The notes under the pieces: generated by a model | What the model was told of the DNA's origin: nothing | What the model saw: the letters and a program-made list of their open reading frames with translations, nothing else | The model's database searches: none | In this document: positions 4,285 through 47,865 of the stretch, piece by piece | Layout: every line of letters begins with the position of its first letter | Position numbering within the stretch: position 1 is the stretch's first letter | Translations under genes and position numbers: made by a program | From: Heteronotia binoei | Taxonomy: Eukaryota | DNA: 64,000 bases | Direction of reading: 5' to 3' | NCBI RefSeq assembly: GCF_032191835.1 | Contig: NC_083234.1 | Coordinates: forward strand, 37,448,001 to 37,512,000

Positions 4285-6567
4285 AGTACCACGGCGCCCT
4301 CTGCGCCCCCGTTCTAAGCTAGCACCGTGGTATACCCCAGAATTGCGGCTGATGAAACGAGGGCTCAGATGGCTAGAGAGGCAGTGGCGATGAACTCGAG
4401 ATGAAGTGACTAGAACATCTTATAGAGAGTTTATGAGGTCCTATGAGATGGCAGTCAAAGCCACAAAGAAAGCTTACTTTGCAGCCAAGATTGTGTCTGT
4501 GACTTCGCGCCTGGCACGATTGTTTAGTATAATTCGGATGCTTACAACACTGCCGCAAGGCAGGCCAAATCTTAGGGAATTGGATGTTAGCTGTGAGGCT
4601 TGTGTGAATTTTTTCACAAACAAGATCTTGTCACTTTGCTATGACCTGTCCGCCACAGTTGAAACAGTATGCGAACTCAAGGCCCCATGCCTGTCTTCTG
4701 ACCAGCTTTGGATCATTTTAAATCACTCAATCTGGAGGAAGTTAACAGAATCCTCTCTACTGTGCGCTCAACAACATGTGATCTGGACCCTTGCCCATCC
4801 TGGCTGATTAAAGCTTGCCAGGGAGAGCTCCGATATTCTATACAGGATATTGTAAATAGATTGCTCTCAGAAGGGCTTTTTCCACTCCTCTCTTGAAAAA
4901 GTCCACCCTAGACCTGGCTGAATTGGCACATTATCAGCCGGTCTCAAATTTACCCTTTTTGAGAGGGCAGTGGCGCTCCAGTTACAGAGCTTTCTGGAGG
5001 ATGCTTCCATCCTAGATTCCCACCAGTCCGGCTTCCATCTAGGCCATGAGACAGAGACAGTTTTGGTCGCCCTGGTGAATGATCTCCAGCAGCATCTGGA
5101 TCAAGGCAGCTCGGTGGTACTGATGTTGTTAGACCTATCGGCTGTGTTTGATACTGTCAACCATCAGCTACTGATCCACCATCTCACCAACGCAGGGATC
5201 CAGGGGTTACCCTTACAGTGGCTCTCCTCTTTCCTTTGTGGCCAGGGACAAAGGGTATTAATTGAGGGAGAATCTTCTCGGAGACCCACCCTTAATTGTG
5301 GTGTGCATCAGGGGGTGGTTCTATCCCCAATGCTGTTTAACATCTATATGTGATCCCTTGCCCAGATTGCCCGGATGTATGGGCTGGTTGCCACCAATAT
5401 GCTGATGACATCCAGCTCTATCTACTAATGGATGGCCGACCTGACGACGTCCCAGTAAACCTGGACCGAGCGCTGCAAGCTGTGGCTAGATGGCTTAAAC
5501 TGAGCCGACTGAAGCTGAATCCAATGAAGACAGAGGTCCTTTGCCTGAGTTGCAGTGGTCTGGGTTGGGGAACTCCCCTACCAACTTTTGACGGTGCACC
5601 ACTGACAATGGCGCACAAGGTCAGAAGCTTGGGGGTACTACTCGAGTCCCCCTTGACAATGGAGGCCCAGATAGCAGCAACTGCGAAATCTGCCTTTTTT
5701 TCATTTTAGGTGGGCGAAACAGTTGGCTGCTTTCCTTGACTGAAGCAACCTGGCAACGGTAATCCATGCAACAGTCACCTCAAGGTTGGACTACTGTAGT
5801 GCCCTCTACATGGGGCTGCCCTTGTCACAAACCCGGAAAAAACAGCTAGTGCAGAATGCAGTGGCTAGGCTGTTATTGGAGCTGCCCAGGTGGGAGCACA
5901 TACAGCTGGCGCTGCAAGAACTGCACTGGCTGCCTATAGTATACCGGATTCACTACAAGGTGCTGGTCATTACTTTTAAGGCCCTTTGTGGCCAAGGACC
6001 TGTCTACCTGAGGGACTGCCTGTCCCCACATGTTCCCCAGAGGGTACTAAGATCGGGAACTCAACATCTCTTAGTGGTCCCCAGACTGAGAGAGGCGAGA
6101 CTGACGACTTCTTGGGATTGCGCCTTCTAAGTAGCAGCCCTCTACTGGTGGAATCAACTGCCGGAAGAGGTTAGGGCCTTGCGGGACCTCACTCAGTTCC
6201 GCAAGGCCTGTAAGACCATACTCTTCCAGCTTGCTTTCAGCTGACCCTTGAGACCTATAACAGCAGGAGGAATCCAGGAAATAGTGACGCCAGGCTAACT
6301 GGATAATACCAAAATATTATTAGCACCAGCTGTTTTAAATTGTTTTATTAACTGACTGATTTTATTACTAATGTGAGATTAGATTTTATTACTATTGTTA
6401 TTATGATCAATGTTTATTTTATTTATTTATATTTAGACTTATATCCCGCCCTTCTCACCAAAGTGTCTCAGGGTGGCTTACAACATAATAATTTACAATG
6501 TTGTAAGCTGCCCTGAGCCTGCCTCGGTGGGGAGGGTGGGGTATAATTTTAATAAACTAAACTAAAG
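4285..6567 (+). mobile_element. L2-clade LINE, 5'-truncated, decayed ORF2 (RT)
   Basis: Broken ORFs 4406-6130 encode CDLDPCPSWLIK, LLDLSAVFDTVNH, QGVVLSPMLFNIY, HQYADDIQLY, LDYCSALYMGLP; 3' end gtaagctgccctgagcc...gagggtggggtataa...aataaa; several frameshifts and stops. Confidence 0.92.
6415..6495 (-). mobile_element. Antisense L2-type 3' tail fragment inserted in the L2 3'UTR
   Basis: Reverse complement reads gttgtaagccaccctgagacactttggtgagaagggcgggatataagtc(taaa)n; 7-bp TSD CAATGTT at 6408-6414 and 6496-6502. Confidence 0.7.
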
Positions 6568-34734: not shown

Positions 34735-36890
34735 TCAATAAAGAGCAGCTTATAGGGCATTTATAAGAACCTATGAGATGGTGGTCAAGGCCGCTAAGAA
34801 AGTACTGTATACTTTACAGCCATGATTGCGTCTGGGAACTCGCACCCAGCACAATTATTTAGAACAATTCGGTCTCTAACTACCCTACCGATGGGTATAC
34901 CAAATGCTAGGGAATTGGATATCGGCTGTGAGGCCTTTGCAAACTTCTTTGCAGATAAAGTCCTGTCACTCCGCTGCGACCTCCCAGTCACTTTAGAAAC
35001 AGTAACAGAACTCAAGGCTCCGAGCACGTCTTCTAGTCCAGTTTTGGATTCTTTCACTCCACTCAGCCTGGAGGAAGTTGATAGAATACTCTCTACTGTA
35101 TGCCCAACTATCTGTAGGCTGGACCCCTGCCCCTCTTGGCTAATAAAAGCTGGCCGTGAGGGGCTACAGGCTCCCCTAAGAGAAATTGTCAACCAGTCCC
35201 TTCTTGAGGGAACCTTTCCCCGAACTCTTAAGGAGGCTGTGGTTCATCCCCTTCTAAAAAAGCCATCTTTGGACCCAGCTGAATTGGCAAACTATCAGCC
35301 GGTGTCCAACTTGCCGTTTTTAGGCAAGATTATTGAAAGGGCTGTGGCAGTGCAGCTCCAGAGTTTTCTGGATGACACTTCGGTGCTAAACCTACATCAA
35401 TCTAGTTTTCATCCGGGTTATGGGACGGAGACAATACTGGTCACCCTCACAGATGACCTCCAGAGACACCTGGAAAGAGGTGGCTCAGCAGTGCTGATGT
35501 TATTAGACCTGTCAGCAGCGTTCAACATGGTTGATCATCAGTTACTGACCTGTCGCCTCGCCGGTGCTGGAATCCAGGGGTTAGCCTTGCAGTGGCTTTC
35601 CTCTTTTCTCCAAAGTCAGGGACAGAGGGTGGCACTAGGGAAGAACTATCCTGGTGACACCCACTTATTTGTGGAGTGCTGCAGGGAGCAGTTATTTCTC
35701 CAATGTTATTTAACATCTACATGCGCCCCCTTGCCCAGGTTGCCCAGAGGCATCGGCTGGGTTGTCACCAGTATGCTGATGACACCCAGCTCTATCTGTT
35801 GATGGGTGGCCAGTCCAATCCCACCCTAGAAGATCTGTCTGCAGCATTACAAGCTGTGGCGGGGTGGCTCAGGCTGAGTGGACTGACATTAAATCCAACA
35901 AAGATGGAGGTCCTGTACCTAAGTCACCACGGTCTGGAAACGGAGGTCCTTTTACCGACCTTCGATGGGGCACAATTTATGCCGGTGCCCAAGGTTAAAA
36001 GCTTAGGAGTGCTCTTGGATGCCTCCTTAACGATGGAGGCCCAAGTAGCTGCCACTGCCAGGTCAGCTTTTTACCATCTGCGGATGGTAAGGCAGTTGGT
36101 TACCTTTCTTGATTGGGACGACTTAGCTATTGTGATCCATGCTACAGTCACCTTGAGATTAGATTACTGCAATGCCCTCTACATGGGGCTGCCCTTGTAC
36201 CAAATCCGGCGACTCCAACTAGTGCAGAATGCTGCAGTCAGGTGGTTAATGGGAGTTCCTTTACAGGAGCACATTCGGCCTGTGCTGAAATCACTGCACT
36301 GGCTACTGATAGTGTACTGGATTCGCTTCAAGGTGCTGGTTATCACCTTTAAAGCCCTATATGGCCAGGGTCCTGCATACCGTAGGGACTGCCTTTCCCC
36401 ATATATGCCCCAGCGAGCACTTCGGTCCGGAACCCAAAACCGGTTGATGGTCCCCAGCATCAAAGAAGCTAGGCTTGCGTCAACAAGAGGCAGGGCCTTT
36501 TCCATCGCTGCTCCTAGCTGGTGGAATGAGTTGCCGGAGGAGGTGAGGACCCTGCGAGAGCTCACACAGTTCTGCAGAGCCTGCAAAATGGTAATCTTCC
36601 ACCACGCTTTTTCATAACCCATACAGCGATGGATTGGGCCCAGAAATACCACCAGTGGCTTGTCTGGGACCTCCAGAAGTTTAAAAATCGACCAGTCTGA
36701 TTACCACCACTAATATCTTGTTGTTCAGATACATCAAATTAGCACCAGATGTTTTAAATGTTTTAATGTTTTTATATTTAATATTATATTTAGTGTTAAA
36801 TGGTTGGGCATGCTATTGCTGACCCTCATATTGTTAGCCGCCCTGAGCCTGCCTTGGCAGGGAGGGCGGGATATAAATAAAATAAATAAA
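34735..36890 (+). mobile_element. L2-clade LINE, 5'-truncated, ORF2 RT region broken mainly by one frameshift
   Basis: ORF 34822-35802 (LDPCPSWLIK, NYQPVSNLPFLGK, LLDLSAAFNMVDH) plus ORF 35676-36617 (QGAVISPMLFNIY, YADDTQLY, RLDYCNALYMGLP); frameshift near 35640; L2 3' stem-loop and (TAAA)n tail. Confidence 0.93.
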
Positions 36891-38087: not shown

Positions 38088-38837
38088 CCAACAACCAACA
38101 ACTTCAACTAACATACAAAACTGGAAACTGAAACAAGAGCTCCACCCAATAGGACCAAACTAAATCACACAGATATTCAGGGAGGAGTGGACTGTTTTGA
38201 TACATACATACATATATACAATAAATATACCACAGTGTTCAAACATGGAGGGAGGCACAGGCTTTGGACAACATTTGGGTCACTCTGGCAAACCAAAATG
38301 ATAGCCAACATTGAAGACATGGTTCTGGCTCTGAGCATCATGAGGTGAAGATTGGTAGGGAAGAACATAGGCAGGAGGGGGGTGTGGATAAAGGTAGCAG
38401 AGGGAGGGAGGAAATGAAATTACTAGCCATGTGAAAGGGGAAAAGGAGGCAATCTCCACTGATCTTTAATGGCAGCAGGTGGCAGGGGATCAAACAGTCT
38501 AAGAATAAGAGTGAAACAAATAATGAAGGGTAAATTTTGTGATGTGTGTGTGGGGGGGGAAGAATCAGCATTGAAGCATGATGGCCACAAAGTGTTGTTC
38601 AGAAAGAGCAGTATCTGATTGGGTTTTAAGATCCTTCCCTATTTTCTGCTTTTTCTACCTTACAGGGCTGCTCTCTTTCAAAGACTCTTTCTTTGAAAAA
38701 GAAAGTTATCAGAGAAGCAAGCTGTCAAATCAGGGGTGCAGGTAGAGATGCCTCCCTCTGCAAGCTGTGCTTCCCCCTCAAAAGTGTCCCATAAATGTCT
38801 TAATTAGCTCCAGTAACAGAGTTCAGAAACACTTCCT

Positions 38838-39040
38838 ATGGAGTTGCAAGGTCCAGGTTCAGGAACTCCTGGAGATTTGGGGATTGAGCTGGGGGAGGAC
38901 AGGGACCTCAGTGGGGTACAATGCCAGATAGTCCACTCTCAAAAGCATCCATTTTCTCCAAGGGAACTGAACTCTGTTATCTGGGGATGAATTGAAATTC
39001 CAGGGGATCCCCAGGTCCCACTTGGAGGCTGGTATCCCTT
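38838..39040 (+). mobile_element. Short TAGGGTTGCCA-family hAT MITE
   Basis: Family core sequence. Confidence 0.72.
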
Positions 39041-40010
39041 CCTAATAATGAAAGTGGCTCAAGATTGGAACCCGTTATCTTGGCAGGGGAAACTTTCAGT
39101 TGTTGGAGGTCTTCAAGTAGAGGCTAGAAAGCCCTCCACTGGAAATATTATAGCTTTAGCTTAGAGGGGTGTATGTGCACTAGATGGCCCTCAGGTTCCC
39201 TTCTAACTCCAGGAGGTCAGTTCTCTGGACTTGATAGTCTTATAACATACAGCCTTCTCCTTGGTTCTTGTCTCATGCACACAATCTCTTGTGTAGTATG
39301 AAAAGGGGAAAGCAAAAACCTGTTTCATTTCTGAAATGCCATCAATATAACAGATAACAATAATGAACTTTCAGCTTGGGTGCTCGCCCAGTTTGGGGCA
39401 AGGAGGTAGTCAGAGGACTGACACCTGTCATGCTTGACTTGCATGCCCTTGCCGCATTAATGTAAACAATGAATAAAGTGGCCCTTGGTTGTTCCCAGCT
39501 CTTGTGTCTGCCTCTTTATTCTGACTGGGGGGGGGGGGTCAAAAACCTGTTTCATTTCTGAAATGCCATCGGTAGAACAGATAACAATGATGAACTTTCA
39601 GCTTGGGCTGGGACTCCCAGAACTCTCAGGCTCCACTAATGTGTTCCTTCTCTCCCCCCATCTCCAAATCTCTCTGCAAGAACAGGATTCCTGCCTACTC
39701 AGCATAGTTAAAGCTGATTATGGTCTTAGATTTCTGCAGCGAGGAAACTCAAATGGATGTTGAAACAGTCAGTGGCATATTATATAAAGAAGTACAAGTA
39801 TCACATGAAGCCATTATGCTTACTCATTTCTGTATATTTTAAATCACAGCTTTGCCAAGAGAACAATTGTAACTTACTGGTTTTTGAGCTTCTGTGGAGT
39901 TTACAGGAAATAGGACCTCTACAGATTACTTATAGAATTTTCTTGCCATCAAAGCTCTTTGGTAGACCTGTTTAATCTATTCTCTTTTCCTCCAAATCCA
40001 GTAGAAAGGC

Positions 40011-40412
40011 AGGTTTGCAAATCAATTGCCTGCCCATAATAATAATAATTAAAAAACTCTTCCTTTGATCTGCGGCTCTTGGCCGTATATAGTCAGCTGA
40101 TGTGTGTACATGGGCTCACAGAAAATTTGTTCTTGTTGATTTATAGACTGCAAACAAGATGATTCTTTTTTTATAGATAGCATCACAGCAAACCAGTACA
40201 ATATACCCAGCACACATCAAAAGCAGCAGAAACCTTGGAACACCAAATAAACCCAGGTGTGTGATACAGCGTACCAGTGTGTTGACAGAAAGATTGGCAG
40301 TGCTTTCTGATTTTAATCTTTGCCAAACAGGAGTAAATAGTGCTGTTTAAAATAGTTATCAAGGCTTTATGCAATGAACATCCTGATCTGAAACATGAGT
40401 GCTTGGAGTTAA
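40011..40412 (+). repeat. Source copy of a 402-bp inverted duplication
   Basis: Reverse complement matches 42061-42462 with no difference I could find; both encode the same peptide in the ORF track (40183..40419 - and 42099..42290 +). Confidence 0.95.
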
Positions 40413-40950
40413 GCCCCACATCATTCAGTGGGTCTTAATTCTTGCCATCTCCCTTTTGGATTCTACCCCAGGGGAAAACTACACAATACACACAAATGAA
40501 AAACAATATTGAACAGCTACAAATTTTAATCCAGCATTGAGTTAGCCATTTCTCTGCTGCCTATTTTCCCACTCAGTGACCCCTAAGCTGCTTCTCTTGT
40601 CAGTGATTCCAGATATGGGGCTGGATCTGATACAAAATTCCACTTGCACAAGAGCTCTTGCGCAAGTGGAAACACAAATTCCTTCAGTTCTTCTCTGTTG
40701 CCATAAAGATCTGGTTTTCACCCTGCTTATCCTTTGACAACAAAAGAAAATTTAGGAGGCAGTTCCCACCCCCAGAAGCTGTTCATTAGGGCTAGTTGTA
40801 GAGCTTGCAGTCTCACAAACGGTTTGATTCCAAGCGTGCCTTTGGAATAGAAGTGGATCATGACTGTCAATGATTGATTTCAGACACAGAGTACAAGCAA
40901 CTCATTTAGAAAGCTGTTGTATAGCCAATGATTGTTCGCTTTATTTGCAG

Positions 40951-41004
40951 AGATCATTGGTTTAGCTCCTTGGCATTTGGCCATGATAAAGCATACTGTC
41001 TTTG
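40951..41004 (+). other. Candidate 54-nt frame-preserving exon
   Basis: Acceptor ttcgctttatttgcag, donor TTG|gtaaaa; open in phases 1 and 2; unverified. Confidence 0.25.
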
Positions 41005-41767
41005 GTAAAAGAATAACATGTTTTGAGAGTTTATACATCTCAATAGTATATGGTTATTTCTGTTGAATTTAAACCCACCTTCTCCTTAGCATAGCCAAGG
41101 ATGTATCACATCCATCTGCCCAGCTAATCAAACTTGTACAAACCAAGATGATCTTTGACACTTTGTACACATATAGATATATTTCTTGTTTCCATTTTGC
41201 AGACTTTTAGAAAAAAAATCTAGAAATGAACAAAAAAAATATCCTCTTTACTCTCTCTTGGTCTTCTGCCTTGAACTTCAGAGTCTGTTCATCTTCCTAT
41301 TCATCCAGTAACTACAAGTGGTATGGCGAGTGACAGGATACTATTCATTTGCAGTTCTATTAGTGGAAGCTACAGTTACCAATTCAAATCAGTGGAAGAA
41401 AGATAATTACAAGAGCTGATTGCCAGGCATCCTCCCATATTGACTCATAGGGCAAAGAGGGAACGAGAAAGAGAAGCTAAAATTATAGCACAACTCTTGG
41501 CGGAATATTAATGTAATAGTTTTAACATGATCCTACTCTCTTTTTATCAAGTAAAGTTAATAAAAAGGTACGGCTCTGGTAATTTTTTGCAATATTACAT
41601 TTTTCTTTGCAATAATTACAACTCTGTGTTCACTTGGTGGACTAATGAAACTTTTACACCTTTTATATATGTATATATGTATGTATCGGAATGATCTTCC
41701 TTTGGGCTGTGAAAGCCCGCAGCAGAAGTTAATTTTTTTTTTTTAACTTTCATGTGCAATATTCTAG

Positions 41768-41779
41768 GGTATGTCTTTG
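41768..41779 (+). other. Candidate 12-nt microexon GGTATGTCTTTG
   Basis: T-rich tract, TGC at 41755-41757, ctag acceptor, gtaaaa donor; unverified. Confidence 0.2.
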
Positions 41780-42060
41780 GTAAAAGAATACCATGTTTTG
41801 AAAGTTTATACATCTCAAAGGTGTATGATTATTTTTGTTGCTTTTAAACCTACCTTCTCTTTAGTATCTGTCCAACAACCATTCAAGGTTTGAAGTATTC
41901 ACTTCATTCTTGGCCAAGAGACAAATTACAAGATAGCTGACCCAAAGCTATCCTGATCTGAGATTGTAATAAGCCTCCAAGCTTAAAGTCCAACATGTGT
42001 ATCATAGTGAAGGCCAATACACAGAACTCTTTTGGCAGATTAGGAAATAGACTGAGGGTC

Positions 42061-42462
42061 TTAACTCCAAGCACTCATGTTTCAGATCAGGATGTTCATT
42101 GCATAAAGCCTTGATAACTATTTTAAACAGCACTATTTACTCCTGTTTGGCAAAGATTAAAATCAGAAAGCACTGCCAATCTTTCTGTCAACACACTGGT
42201 ACGCTGTATCACACACCTGGGTTTATTTGGTGTTCCAAGGTTTCTGCTGCTTTTGATGTGTGCTGGGTATATTGTACTGGTTTGCTGTGATGCTATCTAT
42301 AAAAAAAGAATCATCTTGTTTGCAGTCTATAAATCAACAAGAACAAATTTTCTGTGAGCCCATGTACACACATCAGCTGACTATATACGGCCAAGAGCCG
42401 CAGATCAAAGGAAGAGTTTTTTAATTATTATTATTATGGGCAGGCAATTGATTTGCAAACCT
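42061..42462 (-). repeat. Inserted inverted copy of 40011-40412 flanked by an 11-bp TSD
   Basis: GACTGAGGGTC at 42050-42060 and 42463-42473. Confidence 0.92.
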
Positions 42463-42956
42463 GACTGAGGGTCAAAATTAGACTGTCATTGGAGTTTCAC
42501 AGGTATTTTTAAAATGGATTTGGGATGCACAGCTGTATGGGAAGTGAGGTTTTAACCCTCTTAATACAGAGTTTCTTGACTGAAACCATCCTTCACTGGA
42601 ACATCTTTTGCCTTTTTTTTTCTCTGTGAAGTGTTGCAATCAGGGCTGGCCCACTAGGTATTCCTAGGCAATTACCCAGGTGTCAGGAAGGGCACCAAAC
42701 AGACCAGGTTTCTACCTAGCCAAGACATTGGAGAAGTGCTCATGGACCTAGTAGACAGCTGGCTGATGGACTTTGCTTCCTCTCTCCCTTTGTCCATCAA
42801 GAATGGGCTCTGCTACCTGCCCACACTGTGAGGGATGAAGACTAACTGAATGTACCAACTGCCAGGGAAGAGGAAGATGGGTGGCATCTTCCTGCTTCCT
42901 CATGGGATTAGAGGAAGCAAAGAGGACTTATCCCTCTGCTTTCCTTTCATCACAAG

Positions 42957-43243
42957 GGTCGTTTTCGCACTCACCTCCAGCCGGCGCGACCCCCCTCTTC
43001 ACCGCGCAGGATCTGCGTGGATTTCGCACTAAATGCCGCGGAGCAGCCCTTTGCGCCGGAAACTCCCGTCGCAAAAGCCGTGCAAACGCCAAACTGCTTT
43101 TTGGCGATTTATGTTTGAGCGGCTTTTGCGCCGGGAGTTTCCGGCGCAAAAGGCTGCTCCGCAGCATTTAGTGCGAAATCCACGCAGATCCTGCGCGGTG
43201 AAGAGGGGGGTCGCGCCGGCTGGAGGTGAGTGCGAAAACGACC
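42957..43243. mobile_element. Young CpG-rich palindromic MITE (PIF/Harbinger-like)
   Basis: About 125-bp near-perfect TIRs starting GGTCGTTTTCGCACTCACC; 3-bp TSD AAG; about 30 intact CpGs. Confidence 0.88.
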
Positions 43244-43316
43244 AAGGAGCCAGTCAATCTGCTCCCTGTGCTTGGTTGTTAGATCATCCCGACCCCATGT
43301 CCAATCACATTCCATC

Positions 43317-43803
43317 TAGAGTTGCCAGTTCTGAGTTGGTAAATTCTTGGAGATTTTGGGAGTGGAGCCTTGGCAGGATGGGGTTTGAGGAGGGAAGAGA
43401 CCTCAATGGAGTATAATACCATAGAATCTACCTTCCAAAGCAGCCATTTTCTCCAGGGAAACTGATTTCTGTAGACTGGGGATTAGTTGTAATTCTAGGA
43501 TACCTAGACACTAGTAACCCTACTTACATCCCACATCAGTGAGCTTATTGGTTTATCCCTCAACATTTAAAAAATACATCTAACATTCTCTCATATTAGG
43601 GTTGCCAGTTCTGGGTTGGGGAATGCCTGGAAATTTTGGTGGTGGAGCCTGGAGAGGGGAGGGTATGGAGAGGTGAGGGACTTCAGCCATAGAACCTACC
43701 CTCCAAAGCAGCCATTTGCTCCAGGGGAACTGATATTGGTCATCTGGAGATCACCTGTATTAGTGAGAGATCTCCAGCTGCCACCTAGAGGCTGGTAACC
43801 CTA
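43317..43803 (+). mobile_element. Two adjacent short TAGGGTTGCCA-family MITEs (43317-43522 and 43597-43803)
   Basis: Both begin tag(a/g)gttgccagttctg and end taacccta. Confidence 0.78.
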
Positions 43804-45071
43804 CCTCAGACTGGCTGTCTCCAAATACTATCTTCATAAACTCTCCCTCTGTCCTAGATGAACCATCTGGACATTTAGTGAAGTGAGCCACATGCTGTCA
43901 TTTACAACAGAGGGAAGCCTTAGCGTACTTCTTGGATTATTTTAAGATATGCAGATCCCACTTCTTAACAAAGTTTTGATCAACAGTAATATACCAGCTA
44001 CCAGGGGAATAAATACAGTGAGGGAATTTGACACATGAAGTGCCATAAGAGAAAAGTCCCTGTCTGTGGTAGCCCCTCCACTGACAAAGAAGTGTGAGAG
44101 GCATGCAGAGCTGGGCCATTAATTAAAAAATAAAACCAGTGGACTATCTGTCATACAGTTCAGTCCTAAACAGAGTTATGCACTGTGACTCCAATTAGGA
44201 TTGCACTGTTATAGTCATAAACAGAGATTATGTAGGCAACCTGAGTTCAAATCCTCAAACCCTGCCTCCAAAGCCCAATAGCTCACGTAGCCCTTGGAGC
44301 ACACTGGCTCGGCAAGAATCCCTTTACTGGTAGGACCATGTTCAACTAAATATTTTGACTCCTTTAGCTGCTTTCTTTGTTGGACCCTTCTAGGTACATC
44401 TCTAAACTTGGTTTCTTATTGAATGCCATTTCCCAGGGCTCCCCCCACACCCAGTACCTCACCAATGCATTATGCACATAGTAGAATTTAATCATTCCTA
44501 TTAGGATTTTCTTCCTCTCAACCCCTCCCCCATCTCTCTACCAGGATGCTTAATGAGCCCAGTCAAGGATATAAAATATTAGTACTCTCTCTATGCCTCT
44601 ATATAGAAAACTAAAGCAATGTATTCAGGGTAAGCTTATGTATTCTGACAAAAGAAAGTACCTCCTGGGTGTTCATTCCAGCAAATGAGATATAAAATAG
44701 TTTCATATTTCCCTGAGGTATTCATAGCATCCATTCTATAAGACTGCAGTGGACTGGGATCCATTAAAATGTTTAAAACTAATCATCTGCTTGGCTAGAA
44801 TATCCTTTAGCCTGCATGGCAAGGTATTGTCAGGATTCTATCACTCTGTCAACATTGCTAATTTGAAATGGTTTAAGGTATTGCAGTTTTTGAGCTAATA
44901 GCAATCTAATTCCACCAGATTCACTTCCTTCCTGTTACCTGCCAGCATGTGTTAGATCAGGATTGGCAGCACATGCATTTCCTAGAAGAAGGGAAAAGAT
45001 ACATATAATATTATCAGCTAAGCAAACATACCTTGTTTTAAAAGATGGCATGGGAAAGCTTCTTCTTCTTT

Positions 45072-45340: not shown

Positions 45341-46401
45341 TCTTCTTCTTTAATTACATTCACATTGGACCACTCCATTTTTTTGAGCTTCTTTTTACTC
45401 TGCACTACAGCAGATGCATGGTTTATTGATACATGATCCCAACTGCTTTAGGTTCCCTTTGTAACATTTTTTTTTTAATTGCAGGTCTGACAAAATGTTT
45501 CTCTTGCAGACCCTACAAAAAAAAAAAGAAGAAGAAGAACATTATTGGGTTGCTTATTAGAAATCCCACAGATTTGATCTGATGAGTAAGTGAAGTGTGT
45601 GTGGAGCTGATTCAATCATAAAATCCAATCTAACAATATATCCCTATCGTCCCTACTGTAAAAGTCAGAAATAGCATTAAATTGTTCCTCTAAGCAAACT
45701 GGGAGCCAGGGTAATGCAGAAGTAATCTATGTTAGAAATAGAAGAGTTGGTTTTTATACTCAACTTTTCTCTACCTTGAGTCTCAAAACAGCTTACAAGC
45801 CATCCCTTCCCCTCCCCACAATAGTCACCTTGTGCGGTAGGTGTAGGGTTGCCAAGTTCTCCAGATCAGAGAGAACTGCTGTTCACTTACCATACCATAA
45901 GAACTGCTGTTCTTAATCACTTACCATACCATGCTGGTATATTCCTTGCTGAAGCATGTTGGAAAAGTTACAGAGGCAGCCCCACATAGGACATAAGTAG
46001 TCAAGGCTTAATTTGTTACTGAGAACATGATTCAACTGCAGTAGACCCAATGCACTAGTTAGAAGTAAGCCATTTGGATCCCCTTAGGTAAAAAAGCCTT
46101 GACTGCCAAAACACACACACCTTTGTGTATCATTAACATATATGAAGGGATTCATACCTTCTGAAAGCTCCCCTCCCAAAAAAGAAAGAAAGAAACCTTC
46201 TTAAGGCCAGGGAACCATAATTTCTATTTGACTCAACTTGACCAATGCATTATGCACATAGTAGAATTTAATAATTCCTATTAGGGTTTTCTTCCTTTCA
46301 ATCCCCTATCCCATCTCTCTACCAAGATTCTTAATAAGCCCAGTCCAGGATATGAAATATTAGTACTCACTCTATGCCTCTATGCCTTGTTCACACAAAA
46401 A

Positions 46402-47645: not shown

Positions 47646-47865
47646 CTAGGGTTGCCAGCTCCAGGTTGAGAAATACTTGGAGATTTTGGAGGTGGAGCCT
47701 GAGGAGAGCAGGGTTTGGGGAGGGGAGAGATTTCAATGGAGTACAAGGCCATAGAGTCCACTTTCCAAAGTGGCCATTTTATCAAGGTGAACTGATCCCT
47801 GTCACCTGGAGAGCAGTTATAATCTCAGGAGATCTCCAGCCATCACCTGGAGGTTGGTAGCACTA
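47646..47865 (+). mobile_element. Short TAGGGTTGCCA-family hAT MITE
   Basis: TAGGGTTGCCAGCTCC start and family core. Confidence 0.8.

What the first reader, a model, noticed from the sequence alone, without database searches (positions are those of the whole stretch)
40011..42473. 402-bp unique segment re-inserted 1.65 kb away, inverted, with an 11-bp target-site duplication
Seen: 42061-42462 is the apparently identical reverse complement of 40011-40412. Only the downstream copy is flanked by a direct repeat (GACTGAGGGTC); there is no polyA tail, no TE termini, and 1-nt microhomology at both junctions. It is not a TIR transposon because no TSD flanks the outer ends. Known: TSD-flanked templated sequence insertions arise when a staggered break (for example from a LINE endonuclease) is repaired from a nearby template. 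Inference: a very recent local templated insertion. If transcribed it gives a 400-bp perfect dsRNA stem, a substrate for ADAR editing, endo-siRNA and back-splicing of anything in the loop.
Basis: partly seen in the sequence, partly recalled or inferred. Interest (0 to 1): 0.75.

Follow-up and report, generated by a model that had tools for sequence, protein, structure and literature searches.

The report
Inverted 402-bp local templated insertion
A 402-base stretch of this gecko's DNA was copied backwards into a spot 1.65 kb away, with an 11-base duplication of the target on both sides; this looks like break-repair or replication template switching, a known kind of mutation and not a new mechanism.

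Summary
Positions 42061-42462 are the perfect reverse complement of 40011-40412 (402/402). GACTGAGGGTC flanks only the downstream copy, and one base of microhomology sits at each junction. There is no poly(A), no inverted termini and no duplication around the pair as a whole. Contigs of a related species (about 8% diverged) run through both ends of the left copy, so that copy is the ancestral source. They also show the unit is low-copy, not a mobile family.

My best reading is a DNA-templated insertion. A break whose two ends overlapped by 11 nt left the end ...GAGGGTC-3'. That end folded back or switched onto the + strand beside 40412 (6 of 8 bases pair there) and copied 402 nt. It then rejoined through 1 nt, and fill-in produced the 11-bp duplication.

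LINE-endonuclease involvement is not supported. There is no poly(A) tail or signal, and the only TTTT/G site lies in the wrong geometry. Assembly error could not be excluded, because no reads of this individual were available. Transcription, editing and back-splicing remain untested.

The scan's first readers noted about ten similar templated insertions elsewhere in this genome. A census of that class is worth more than this single locus.

The parts
40011..40412 (+). Source (template) copy of the 402-bp unit, ancestral and in place
   Evidence: Identical to the reverse complement of 42061-42462. It has no flanking duplication. Contigs of a relative lie across both its ends, at 39527-40070 and 40067-40497.
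40413..40420 (+). Flank of the source (GCCCCACA) that can pair with the 3' end of the target duplication at 6 of 8 positions; proposed priming site
   Evidence: GCCCCACA against the reverse complement of the duplication, GACCCTCA. Random position pairs in this window reach 6/8 in about 0.4-0.6% of trials.
40413..42049 (.). Spacer between the two arms (1,637 bp; 1,648 bp counting the inner duplication copy), in ancestral orientation
   Evidence: The relative's contigs continue from the left arm into 40413-40497 and cover 41233-41982.
42050..42060 (+). Inner copy of the 11-bp target duplication, GACTGAGGGTC
42061..42462 (-). Inserted, inverted copy of the 402-bp unit
   Evidence: 402/402.
42463..42473 (+). 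Outer copy of the 11-bp target duplication, GACTGAGGGTC
42474..42479 (-). AAAATT next to the duplication; on the minus strand this reads AATTTT/G, an L1-endonuclease-like site in non-canonical geometry relative to the duplication
   Evidence: Read directly from the sequence. Geometry is argued against the description of ORF2p cuts in PMC11702581.

Best explanation
This is a genuine, evolutionarily young, DNA-templated insertion made during repair of a chromosome break or collapsed replication fork. The break's two 3' ends overlapped by 11 nt (42050-42060). The left end, ...GACTGAGGGTC-3', lost its partner strand. It folded back, or switched, onto the single-stranded + strand 1.64 kb behind it and paired with GCCCCACA at 40413-40420. 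A polymerase then copied 402 nt, from 40412 down to 40011. The extended end let go and joined the right-hand end through a single G:C pair. Gap filling completed both strands, so the 11-nt overlap now appears once on each side of the insert. In effect it is an aborted fold-back (snap-back) synthesis finished by end joining. Shown: the copy, its orientation, the junction sequences, the duplication, the ancestral status of the left copy and its low copy number. Inferred: the break, its staggered shape, which end primed, the polymerase, and that the template was DNA and not RNA.
For: The inverted copy is exact and the 11-bp duplication flanks only the new copy. Each junction has 1 nt of microhomology, and the inner junction has 6/8 homeology, which is rare by chance at about 0.005. 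The template lies on the same side as the end that would prime on it and is inverted, as snap-back or lagging-template switching requires. The source is intact and orthologous in a relative, and the unit's depth is about 83 against 36-49 in its flanks, while SINE bins reach 1e5-1e6. There is no poly(A), TIR or RNA-family signature. Literature: staggered breaks are filled in to give duplications of the overhang, sometimes with extra inserted bases (PMC8355091). Breaks can be patched with templated sequence whose donor stays intact (PMC5110952). Simple replicative switch-and-return events in which the return point lies behind the departure point were never seen in human data (PMC5453318); this favours two separate ends over a single wandering nascent strand.
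Against: No reads from the assembled individual were available, so the structure rests on the assembly alone. The state of the target site in the relative is unknown, because nothing was laid on 41983-42781. The 6/8 homeology was noticed after the fact. Polymerase-theta snap-back insertions are usually tens of bases long, not 402, so a more processive polymerase has to be assumed. Sequence alone cannot separate a two-ended staggered break from a collapsed fork.
Confidence: 0.55

Rival explanations
1. Replication template switch without a break (FoSTeS-type switch-and-return). The nascent leading strand stalled at 42060, switched to the lagging-strand template 1.64 kb behind, copied 402 nt, and returned to its own template 11 nt behind the point it left.
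For: The geometry and microhomologies are the same as in the best explanation. A 287-bp palindrome lies 484 bp ahead of the site (42957-43243) and a 34-bp one at 40638-40671; either could stall a fork. Short inverted template switches are well documented (PMC5453318).
Against: In the four-point notation this is type 3-2-4-1, with point 4 before point 1. The authors of that model never observed this class, because the return needs the new duplex to reopen. The return here would rest on 1 nt against 11 nt of competing self-pairing. The copied length (402 nt) and distance (1.65 kb) are far beyond the short-range events described.
Confidence: 0.17
2. The break was made by a LINE endonuclease, possibly with the LINE reverse transcriptase copying a local transcript or jumping between templates.
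For: An 11-bp duplication is within the LINE range, close to the 12-18 bp modal range reported for L1 ORF2p in PMC11702581. The same paper reports templated genomic insertions and inverted duplications at ORF2p-cut sites. AATTTT/G on the minus strand abuts the duplication. LINE RT genes are present in the window. First readers noted other insertions in this genome with 11-27-bp duplications (unchecked).
Against: There is no poly(A) tail, no polyadenylation signal near either end of the unit and no LINE sequence in the insert. The 3' ends predicted by the canonical 3'-overhang geometry are ...GGGTC and ...CAGTC, which are not T-rich. The TTTT/G site would give 5' overhangs. The unit's ends are not splice sites and not an Rfam RNA.
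Confidence: 0.1
3. Assembly or library artefact: the inverted copy is not in the animal's genome.
For: The arms are 100% identical, and no read-level evidence could be obtained. The only public run holding the region is a different species, kept as contigs. Junction ORFs are not on record in any public assembly.
Against: This is a clean 413-bp insertion with an exact 11-bp duplication inside otherwise continuous unique sequence, far from gaps. That is not the shape of known long-read artefacts, which from general knowledge are whole-read palindromes or contig-end fold-backs. Older, diverged examples of related events are reported in the same genome (unchecked).
Confidence: 0.08
4. An older inverted duplication whose arms are kept identical by gene conversion. 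The mechanism of origin is the same, but the event is not recent.
For: Inverted repeats a few hundred bp long and 1.6 kb apart can convert each other (general knowledge). The relative's contig over 40067-40497 has about twice the depth of its neighbours.
Against: That contig runs straight through the unit's right end at 40412/40413 without a branch, so the relative does not carry a duplicate with the same boundary. Its depth may be inflated by its 168-nt non-matching tail.
Confidence: 0.07
5. The 402-bp unit is a mobile element, either a non-autonomous DNA transposon or a retroposon.
For: A flanking duplication is the hallmark of transposition; 9-11 bp would suit Mutator-type elements (general knowledge).
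Against: It has no terminal inverted repeats, no tail and no duplication at the source. There are only two copies in the window. The unit is low copy in the relative, where the source is continuous with both flanks.
Confidence: 0.03

Closest known systems
Templated sequence insertions / TSIPs of human cells (Onozawa and Aplan; PMC5110952)
   Same: A unique genomic segment is copied, not cut, into a break, and the donor stays intact. The size is within the experimental range (73-414 bp). The junctions show microhomology.
   Different: Class 1 TSIPs have a duplication plus a poly(A) tail, a poly(A) signal and a TTTT/A site. Class 2 TSIPs have none of these and often small deletions. This event has the duplication alone, so it fits neither class. 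TSIP donors are distant and apparently RNA-derived; here the donor is 1.65 kb away on the same molecule.
Fill-in of staggered double-strand breaks giving tandem duplications, with or without extra inserted bases (PMC8355091; 'patch-mediated' repair in plants as cited there)
   Same: The duplication equals the overlap of the two ends and flanks whatever is inserted between them.
   Different: The experimental overhangs were made by paired nickases (43 nt in the cited experiments). Here the cause of an 11-nt stagger is unknown and the filler is unusually long.
Snap-back / fold-back priming at a resected end (polymerase theta templated insertions; yeast palindrome formation; from general knowledge)
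   Same: The 3' end pairs by microhomology with its own strand upstream and copies it, which gives an inverted copy of nearby sequence on the same side of the break.
   Different: Polymerase-theta insertions are usually under about 30 nt. Fold-back priming normally runs on to make a hairpin-capped or dicentric chromosome. Here synthesis stopped after 402 nt and the end rejoined its partner.
Short-range template switching, four-point model (PMC5453318), and hairpin or miRNA birth by template switching (PMC8794818; bioRxiv 10.1101/2023.04.19.537475)
   Same: One event creates a perfect inverted repeat from nearby sequence, and with it a potential RNA hairpin.
   Different: This event is ten- to a hundred-fold larger in copy length and distance. 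Its switch-point order (3-2-4-1) is the kind not observed in the human data.
L1 ORF2p-associated local rearrangements (PMC11702581)
   Same: Staggered cuts with duplications above ten bp; templated genomic insertions and inverted duplications are reported at cut sites.
   Different: There is no reverse-transcribed sequence, no poly(A), and no endonuclease motif in the canonical position.

Membership tests
Class 1 TSIP (LINE-1 ORF2p-mediated templated insertion) | Target-site duplication of at least 5 bp | tested here: met
   11-bp GACTGAGGGTC on both sides.
Class 1 TSIP (LINE-1 ORF2p-mediated templated insertion) | Non-templated poly(A) tract of 10-40 A at one end | tested here: not met
   Both ends of the insert match the source to the last base. 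There is no A or T run at either junction.
Class 1 TSIP (LINE-1 ORF2p-mediated templated insertion) | Polyadenylation signal 10-30 nt upstream of the 3' end | tested here: not met
   No AATAAA or ATTAAA within 30 nt of either end on either strand (read).
Class 1 TSIP (LINE-1 ORF2p-mediated templated insertion) | Insertion at a 5'-TTTT/A-3' endonuclease site in the canonical position, with the T-rich 3' end priming | tested here: not met
   The priming 3' ends implied by the duplication are ...GGGTC and ...CAGTC. The minus-strand AATTTT/G lies on the far side of the duplication.
Class 2 TSIP (break patched by end joining) | No target-site duplication; microdeletion, microhomology or non-templated bases at the junctions | tested here: not met
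   1-nt microhomology is present, but an 11-bp duplication is also present, and there is no deletion or untemplated base.
Staggered-break fill-in with filler (tandem duplication plus insert) | A direct duplication of the target immediately flanks the filler, and the filler is templated from elsewhere with the donor intact | tested here: met
   donor intact and ancestral.
Staggered-break fill-in with filler (tandem duplication plus insert) | The event began with a staggered double-strand break | not testable with these tools
   Only the product is visible.
Short-range replication template switch (four-point model) | [quoted passage not shown] | tested here: met
Short-range replication template switch (four-point model) | Switch-point order among the observed types (point 1 before point 4) | tested here: not met
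   The order is 3 (40011), 2 (40412), 4 (42050), 1 (42060); point 4 precedes point 1 (against PMC5453318).
FoSTeS / MMBIR | Microhomology at every junction and templated segments from nearby, often inverted | tested here: met
   1 nt at both junctions and 6/8 homeology at one.
FoSTeS / MMBIR | Origin at a stalled or collapsed replication fork | not testable with these tools
   Palindromes nearby are only circumstantial.
TIR DNA transposon / MITE | Terminal inverted repeats, a duplication at every copy, and a multi-copy family | tested here: not met
   No TIRs and no duplication at the source. There are two copies in the window, and the unit is low copy in the relative.

The most novel reading that the evidence does not exclude
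This locus may be one member of a numerous class in this gecko: non-poly(A), locally templated insertions flanked by 11-27-bp target duplications. About ten were flagged by first readers in other windows. If the class is real, a nickase that makes staggered cuts of characteristic spacing, for example a resident LINE endonuclease acting without completing retrotransposition, would routinely seed breaks that are patched by fold-back or nearby-template synthesis. That would be a steady source of new perfect inverted repeats, and so of potential dsRNA, siRNA or miRNA loci, in squamate genomes.
Probability: 0.15. Interest if true: 0.55.

Novelty: new member of a known kind. Interest (0 to 1): 0.3.

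Why it matters
By itself this is a clean, base-resolved example of how one repair event can create a long perfect inverted repeat from unique sequence. Both junctions, the overlap of the two ends and the likely priming site are all readable. Such repeats can become hairpin-RNA loci. They can also promote inversion of the 1.6-kb spacer or local fragility. The greater value is at genome scale. The combination here, a duplication above ten bp, no poly(A) and a nearby template, falls between the two published classes of templated sequence insertions. It seems to recur in this genome. A census could therefore show whether the breaks come from a nickase with a fixed stagger or from replication accidents.

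Tried and rejected
- Rfam scan of the whole window: no family, so the unit is not a known small-RNA retrocopy.
- Tandem Repeats Finder on 36-46 kb: nothing.
- Public reads: one run only, a relative kept as contigs. It settled the ancestry and copy number of the source but not the state of the target site.
- Exact-protein look-ups of three ORFs across the junctions and the source end in public assemblies: none on record.
- Longer homology between source flanks and target flanks, such as a shared old repeat serving as a foothold: none above shuffled controls.
- Other TSD-flanked low-copy local duplicates in this window: none.
- Pfam on 20 long ORFs to find a host gene: only LINE RT fragments, so the intron or intergenic context remains unknown.
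- Transposon reading: rejected (no TIRs, no duplication at the source, low copy).
- Exon or retrocopy reading: rejected (no splice-site dinucleotides at the unit's ends, no tail).
- Scans of metagenome, viral and prokaryote collections were not run, because they cannot hold this vertebrate locus.

Full report
**Observation**

Window 40011-40412 is identical to the reverse complement of 42061-42462, 402 of 402 positions. Beyond that the match breaks down. The repeat finder gives 414 nt at 99% only because it runs into partly matching flanks.

GACTGAGGGTC occurs exactly twice in the 64-kb window, at 42050-42060 and 42463-42473, directly against the two ends of the downstream copy. The upstream copy has no flanking repeat, and neither does the composite 40011-42462. 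Neither end of the unit carries an A or T run, the ends are not inverted repeats of each other, and no third copy exists in the window. The nearest N runs are more than 17 kb away. Chance is not an issue for a 402-nt exact match with an 11-nt exact flank repeat.

**Which copy is the source, and is the unit mobile?**

Only one public run holds any of this region. It is a DNA run of another species, kept as contigs. Laid on 38800-44200, its contigs differ from the window by about 8.4% (82 mismatches over 975 aligned bases in the two relevant contigs).

- One contig lies on 39527-40070 and another on 40067-40497. In the relative, therefore, the unit is continuous with both flanks of the left copy. 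The left copy is ancestral and in place.
- Word depth over the unit is about 83, against 36-49 on neighbouring single-copy contigs. The SINE-like repeats in the same stretch reach 1e5 to 2e6. The unit is not a repeat family.
- The twofold depth is unexplained. The contig passes 40412/40413 without a branch, so it is not a duplicate with the same boundary, and 168 nt of its tail do not fit the window.
- Nothing from the relative was laid on 41983-42781, so I cannot say whether its target site is empty.
- The relative also covers 41233-41982, and the spacer starts in ancestral orientation. The two arms have therefore not flipped the spacer in this haplotype.

**Age**

Zero differences in 402 bp puts a 95% upper bound of about 0.75% on divergence between the arms. 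The two species differ by about 8.4%. The insertion, or the last homogenisation of the arms, therefore falls within roughly the last tenth of the time since the two species split. Gene conversion between the arms could mimic youth, and I could not exclude it.

**Junction anatomy**

Take the duplication as the overlap of two ends. The left end then finishes ...GACTGAGGGTC-3' on the + strand, and the right end finishes ...GACCCTCAGTC-3' on the minus strand.

- The new DNA attached to the left end is the complement of the + strand, read from 40412 down to 40011.
- The bases just beyond the template, 40413-40420 (GCCCCACA), can pair with the last eight bases of the left end at six positions, including the terminal one. 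Random position pairs in this window reach that level in 0.4-0.6% of trials. I noticed this after the fact, so I treat it as suggestive only.
- The other junction has 1 nt of microhomology and nothing more.
- The source flanks and target flanks share no longer homology, so no old repeat served as a foothold.

**Mechanism**

The template lies on the same side of the break as the end that pairs with it. It is on the strand that ends at that break, and it is copied in inverted orientation. That is the geometry of snap-back (fold-back) synthesis on a resected end. It is equally the geometry of a switch from a nascent leading strand to the lagging-strand template behind a fork.

I favour two separate ends over a single strand that switches and returns. 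In the four-point description of template switching this event has the order 3-2-4-1, with the return point 11 nt behind the departure point. The authors of that model found no such type in human-chimp or human-human comparisons, and explained this by the need to reopen the new duplex (PMC5453318).

Staggered breaks, in contrast, are known to be filled in to give a duplication of the overlap, sometimes with additional changes (PMC8355091). Breaks are also known to be patched with copied sequence whose donor stays intact, in the same size range of 73-414 bp (PMC5110952).

My committed reading is therefore a break with an 11-nt overlap, microhomology-primed copying of 402 nt from the exposed + strand 1.64 kb away, release, end joining through 1 nt, and fill-in. 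The steps from 'break' onward are inference.

**LINE endonuclease**

Class 1 templated insertions are defined by a duplication, a poly(A) tract, a poly(A) signal and a TTTT/A site (PMC5110952). Only the duplication is present here.

L1 ORF2p is described as making staggered nicks that leave 3' overhangs, with the T-rich end priming (PMC11702581). The two 3' ends implied here are not T-rich. A minus-strand AATTTT/G does abut the duplication at 42474-42479. A nick there, together with the observed duplication, would mean 5' overhangs, and the insert is not attached to the T run.

LINE reverse-transcriptase fragments exist in the window (34822-36617 and 4970-5709), so LINEs are available in this genome. 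Nothing at this locus ties them to the event. I give this reading about 10%.

**Artefact**

No reads of the assembled animal are served, and three junction ORFs are not on record in public assemblies. A clean 413-bp insertion with an exact flank repeat, in unique sequence far from gaps, is not the usual shape of long-read artefacts. I leave about 8%.

**Consequences**

A transcript through 40011-42462 would carry a perfect 402-bp stem by construction. I found no evidence for or against transcription:

- no RNA run holds the region;
- no Rfam family matches;
- Pfam scans of twenty long ORFs found only LINE pieces, so even the intron or intergenic status is unknown.

Editing, siRNA and back-splicing remain speculation. 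At the DNA level, 402-bp perfect arms could mediate inversion of the spacer, which is testable with long reads.

**Context in this genome**

The scan's index holds about ten first-reader notes of templated insertions in other windows of the same gecko genome. Several have flanking duplications:

- a 115-bp insert with an 11-bp duplication;
- one with a perfect 13-bp duplication;
- a fold-back with about 315-bp arms and a 14-bp duplication;
- a 40-bp inverted copy with a 27-bp duplication;
- a 3.39-kb inverted copy with a 15-17-bp duplication, which a follow-up judged a tidy example of a known kind.

These are unchecked leads, and I could not read those windows. In this window I found no second case. 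If the class is real, its duplication lengths and edge motifs would decide between a nickase and replication accidents.

**Verdict**

It is a new member of a known kind of mutation, of modest interest as a single locus and of more interest as a possible class.

Noticed in passing
window 42957-43243: A CpG-rich palindromic element of about 285 bp: 131-nt arms at 96%, a 25-nt loop, and CAAGG on both sides. It has no second copy in the window and no Rfam match, and it lies 484 bp to the right of the insertion. It is either MITE-like or another fold-back product, and it could act as a fork barrier.
   Followed up: partly
window 40997-41092 / 41772-41867 and 44461-44602 / 46241-46383: Two low-copy local direct duplicates (96 bp at 87.5%, 143 bp at 91.6%) with sharp ends and no flanking duplication. 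They may be older local templated copies in the same 7-kb neighbourhood.
   Followed up: partly
window 40638-40671: A 34-bp near-perfect palindrome (TTCCACTTGCACAAGAGCTC / GAGCTCTTGCGCAAGTGGAA), 225 bp to the right of the source copy.
   Followed up: no
window 34822-36617 (+) and 4406-5709 (+): Two copies of one LINE family with reverse-transcriptase ORF pieces of up to 326 aa (Pfam RVT_1). The family was not typed.
   Followed up: partly
window 40067-40497 (contig of run X1): The relative's contig over most of the source has about twice the word depth of its neighbours (82.8 against 36 and 43.6). It ends in 168 nt that do not fit the window. This is unexplained.
   Followed up: no
window 38867-39043, 43316-43505, 43597-43806, 47646-47865 and others: A SINE-like family at 70-80% identity between copies. 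Its word depth in the relative is 1e5-2e6.
   Followed up: no
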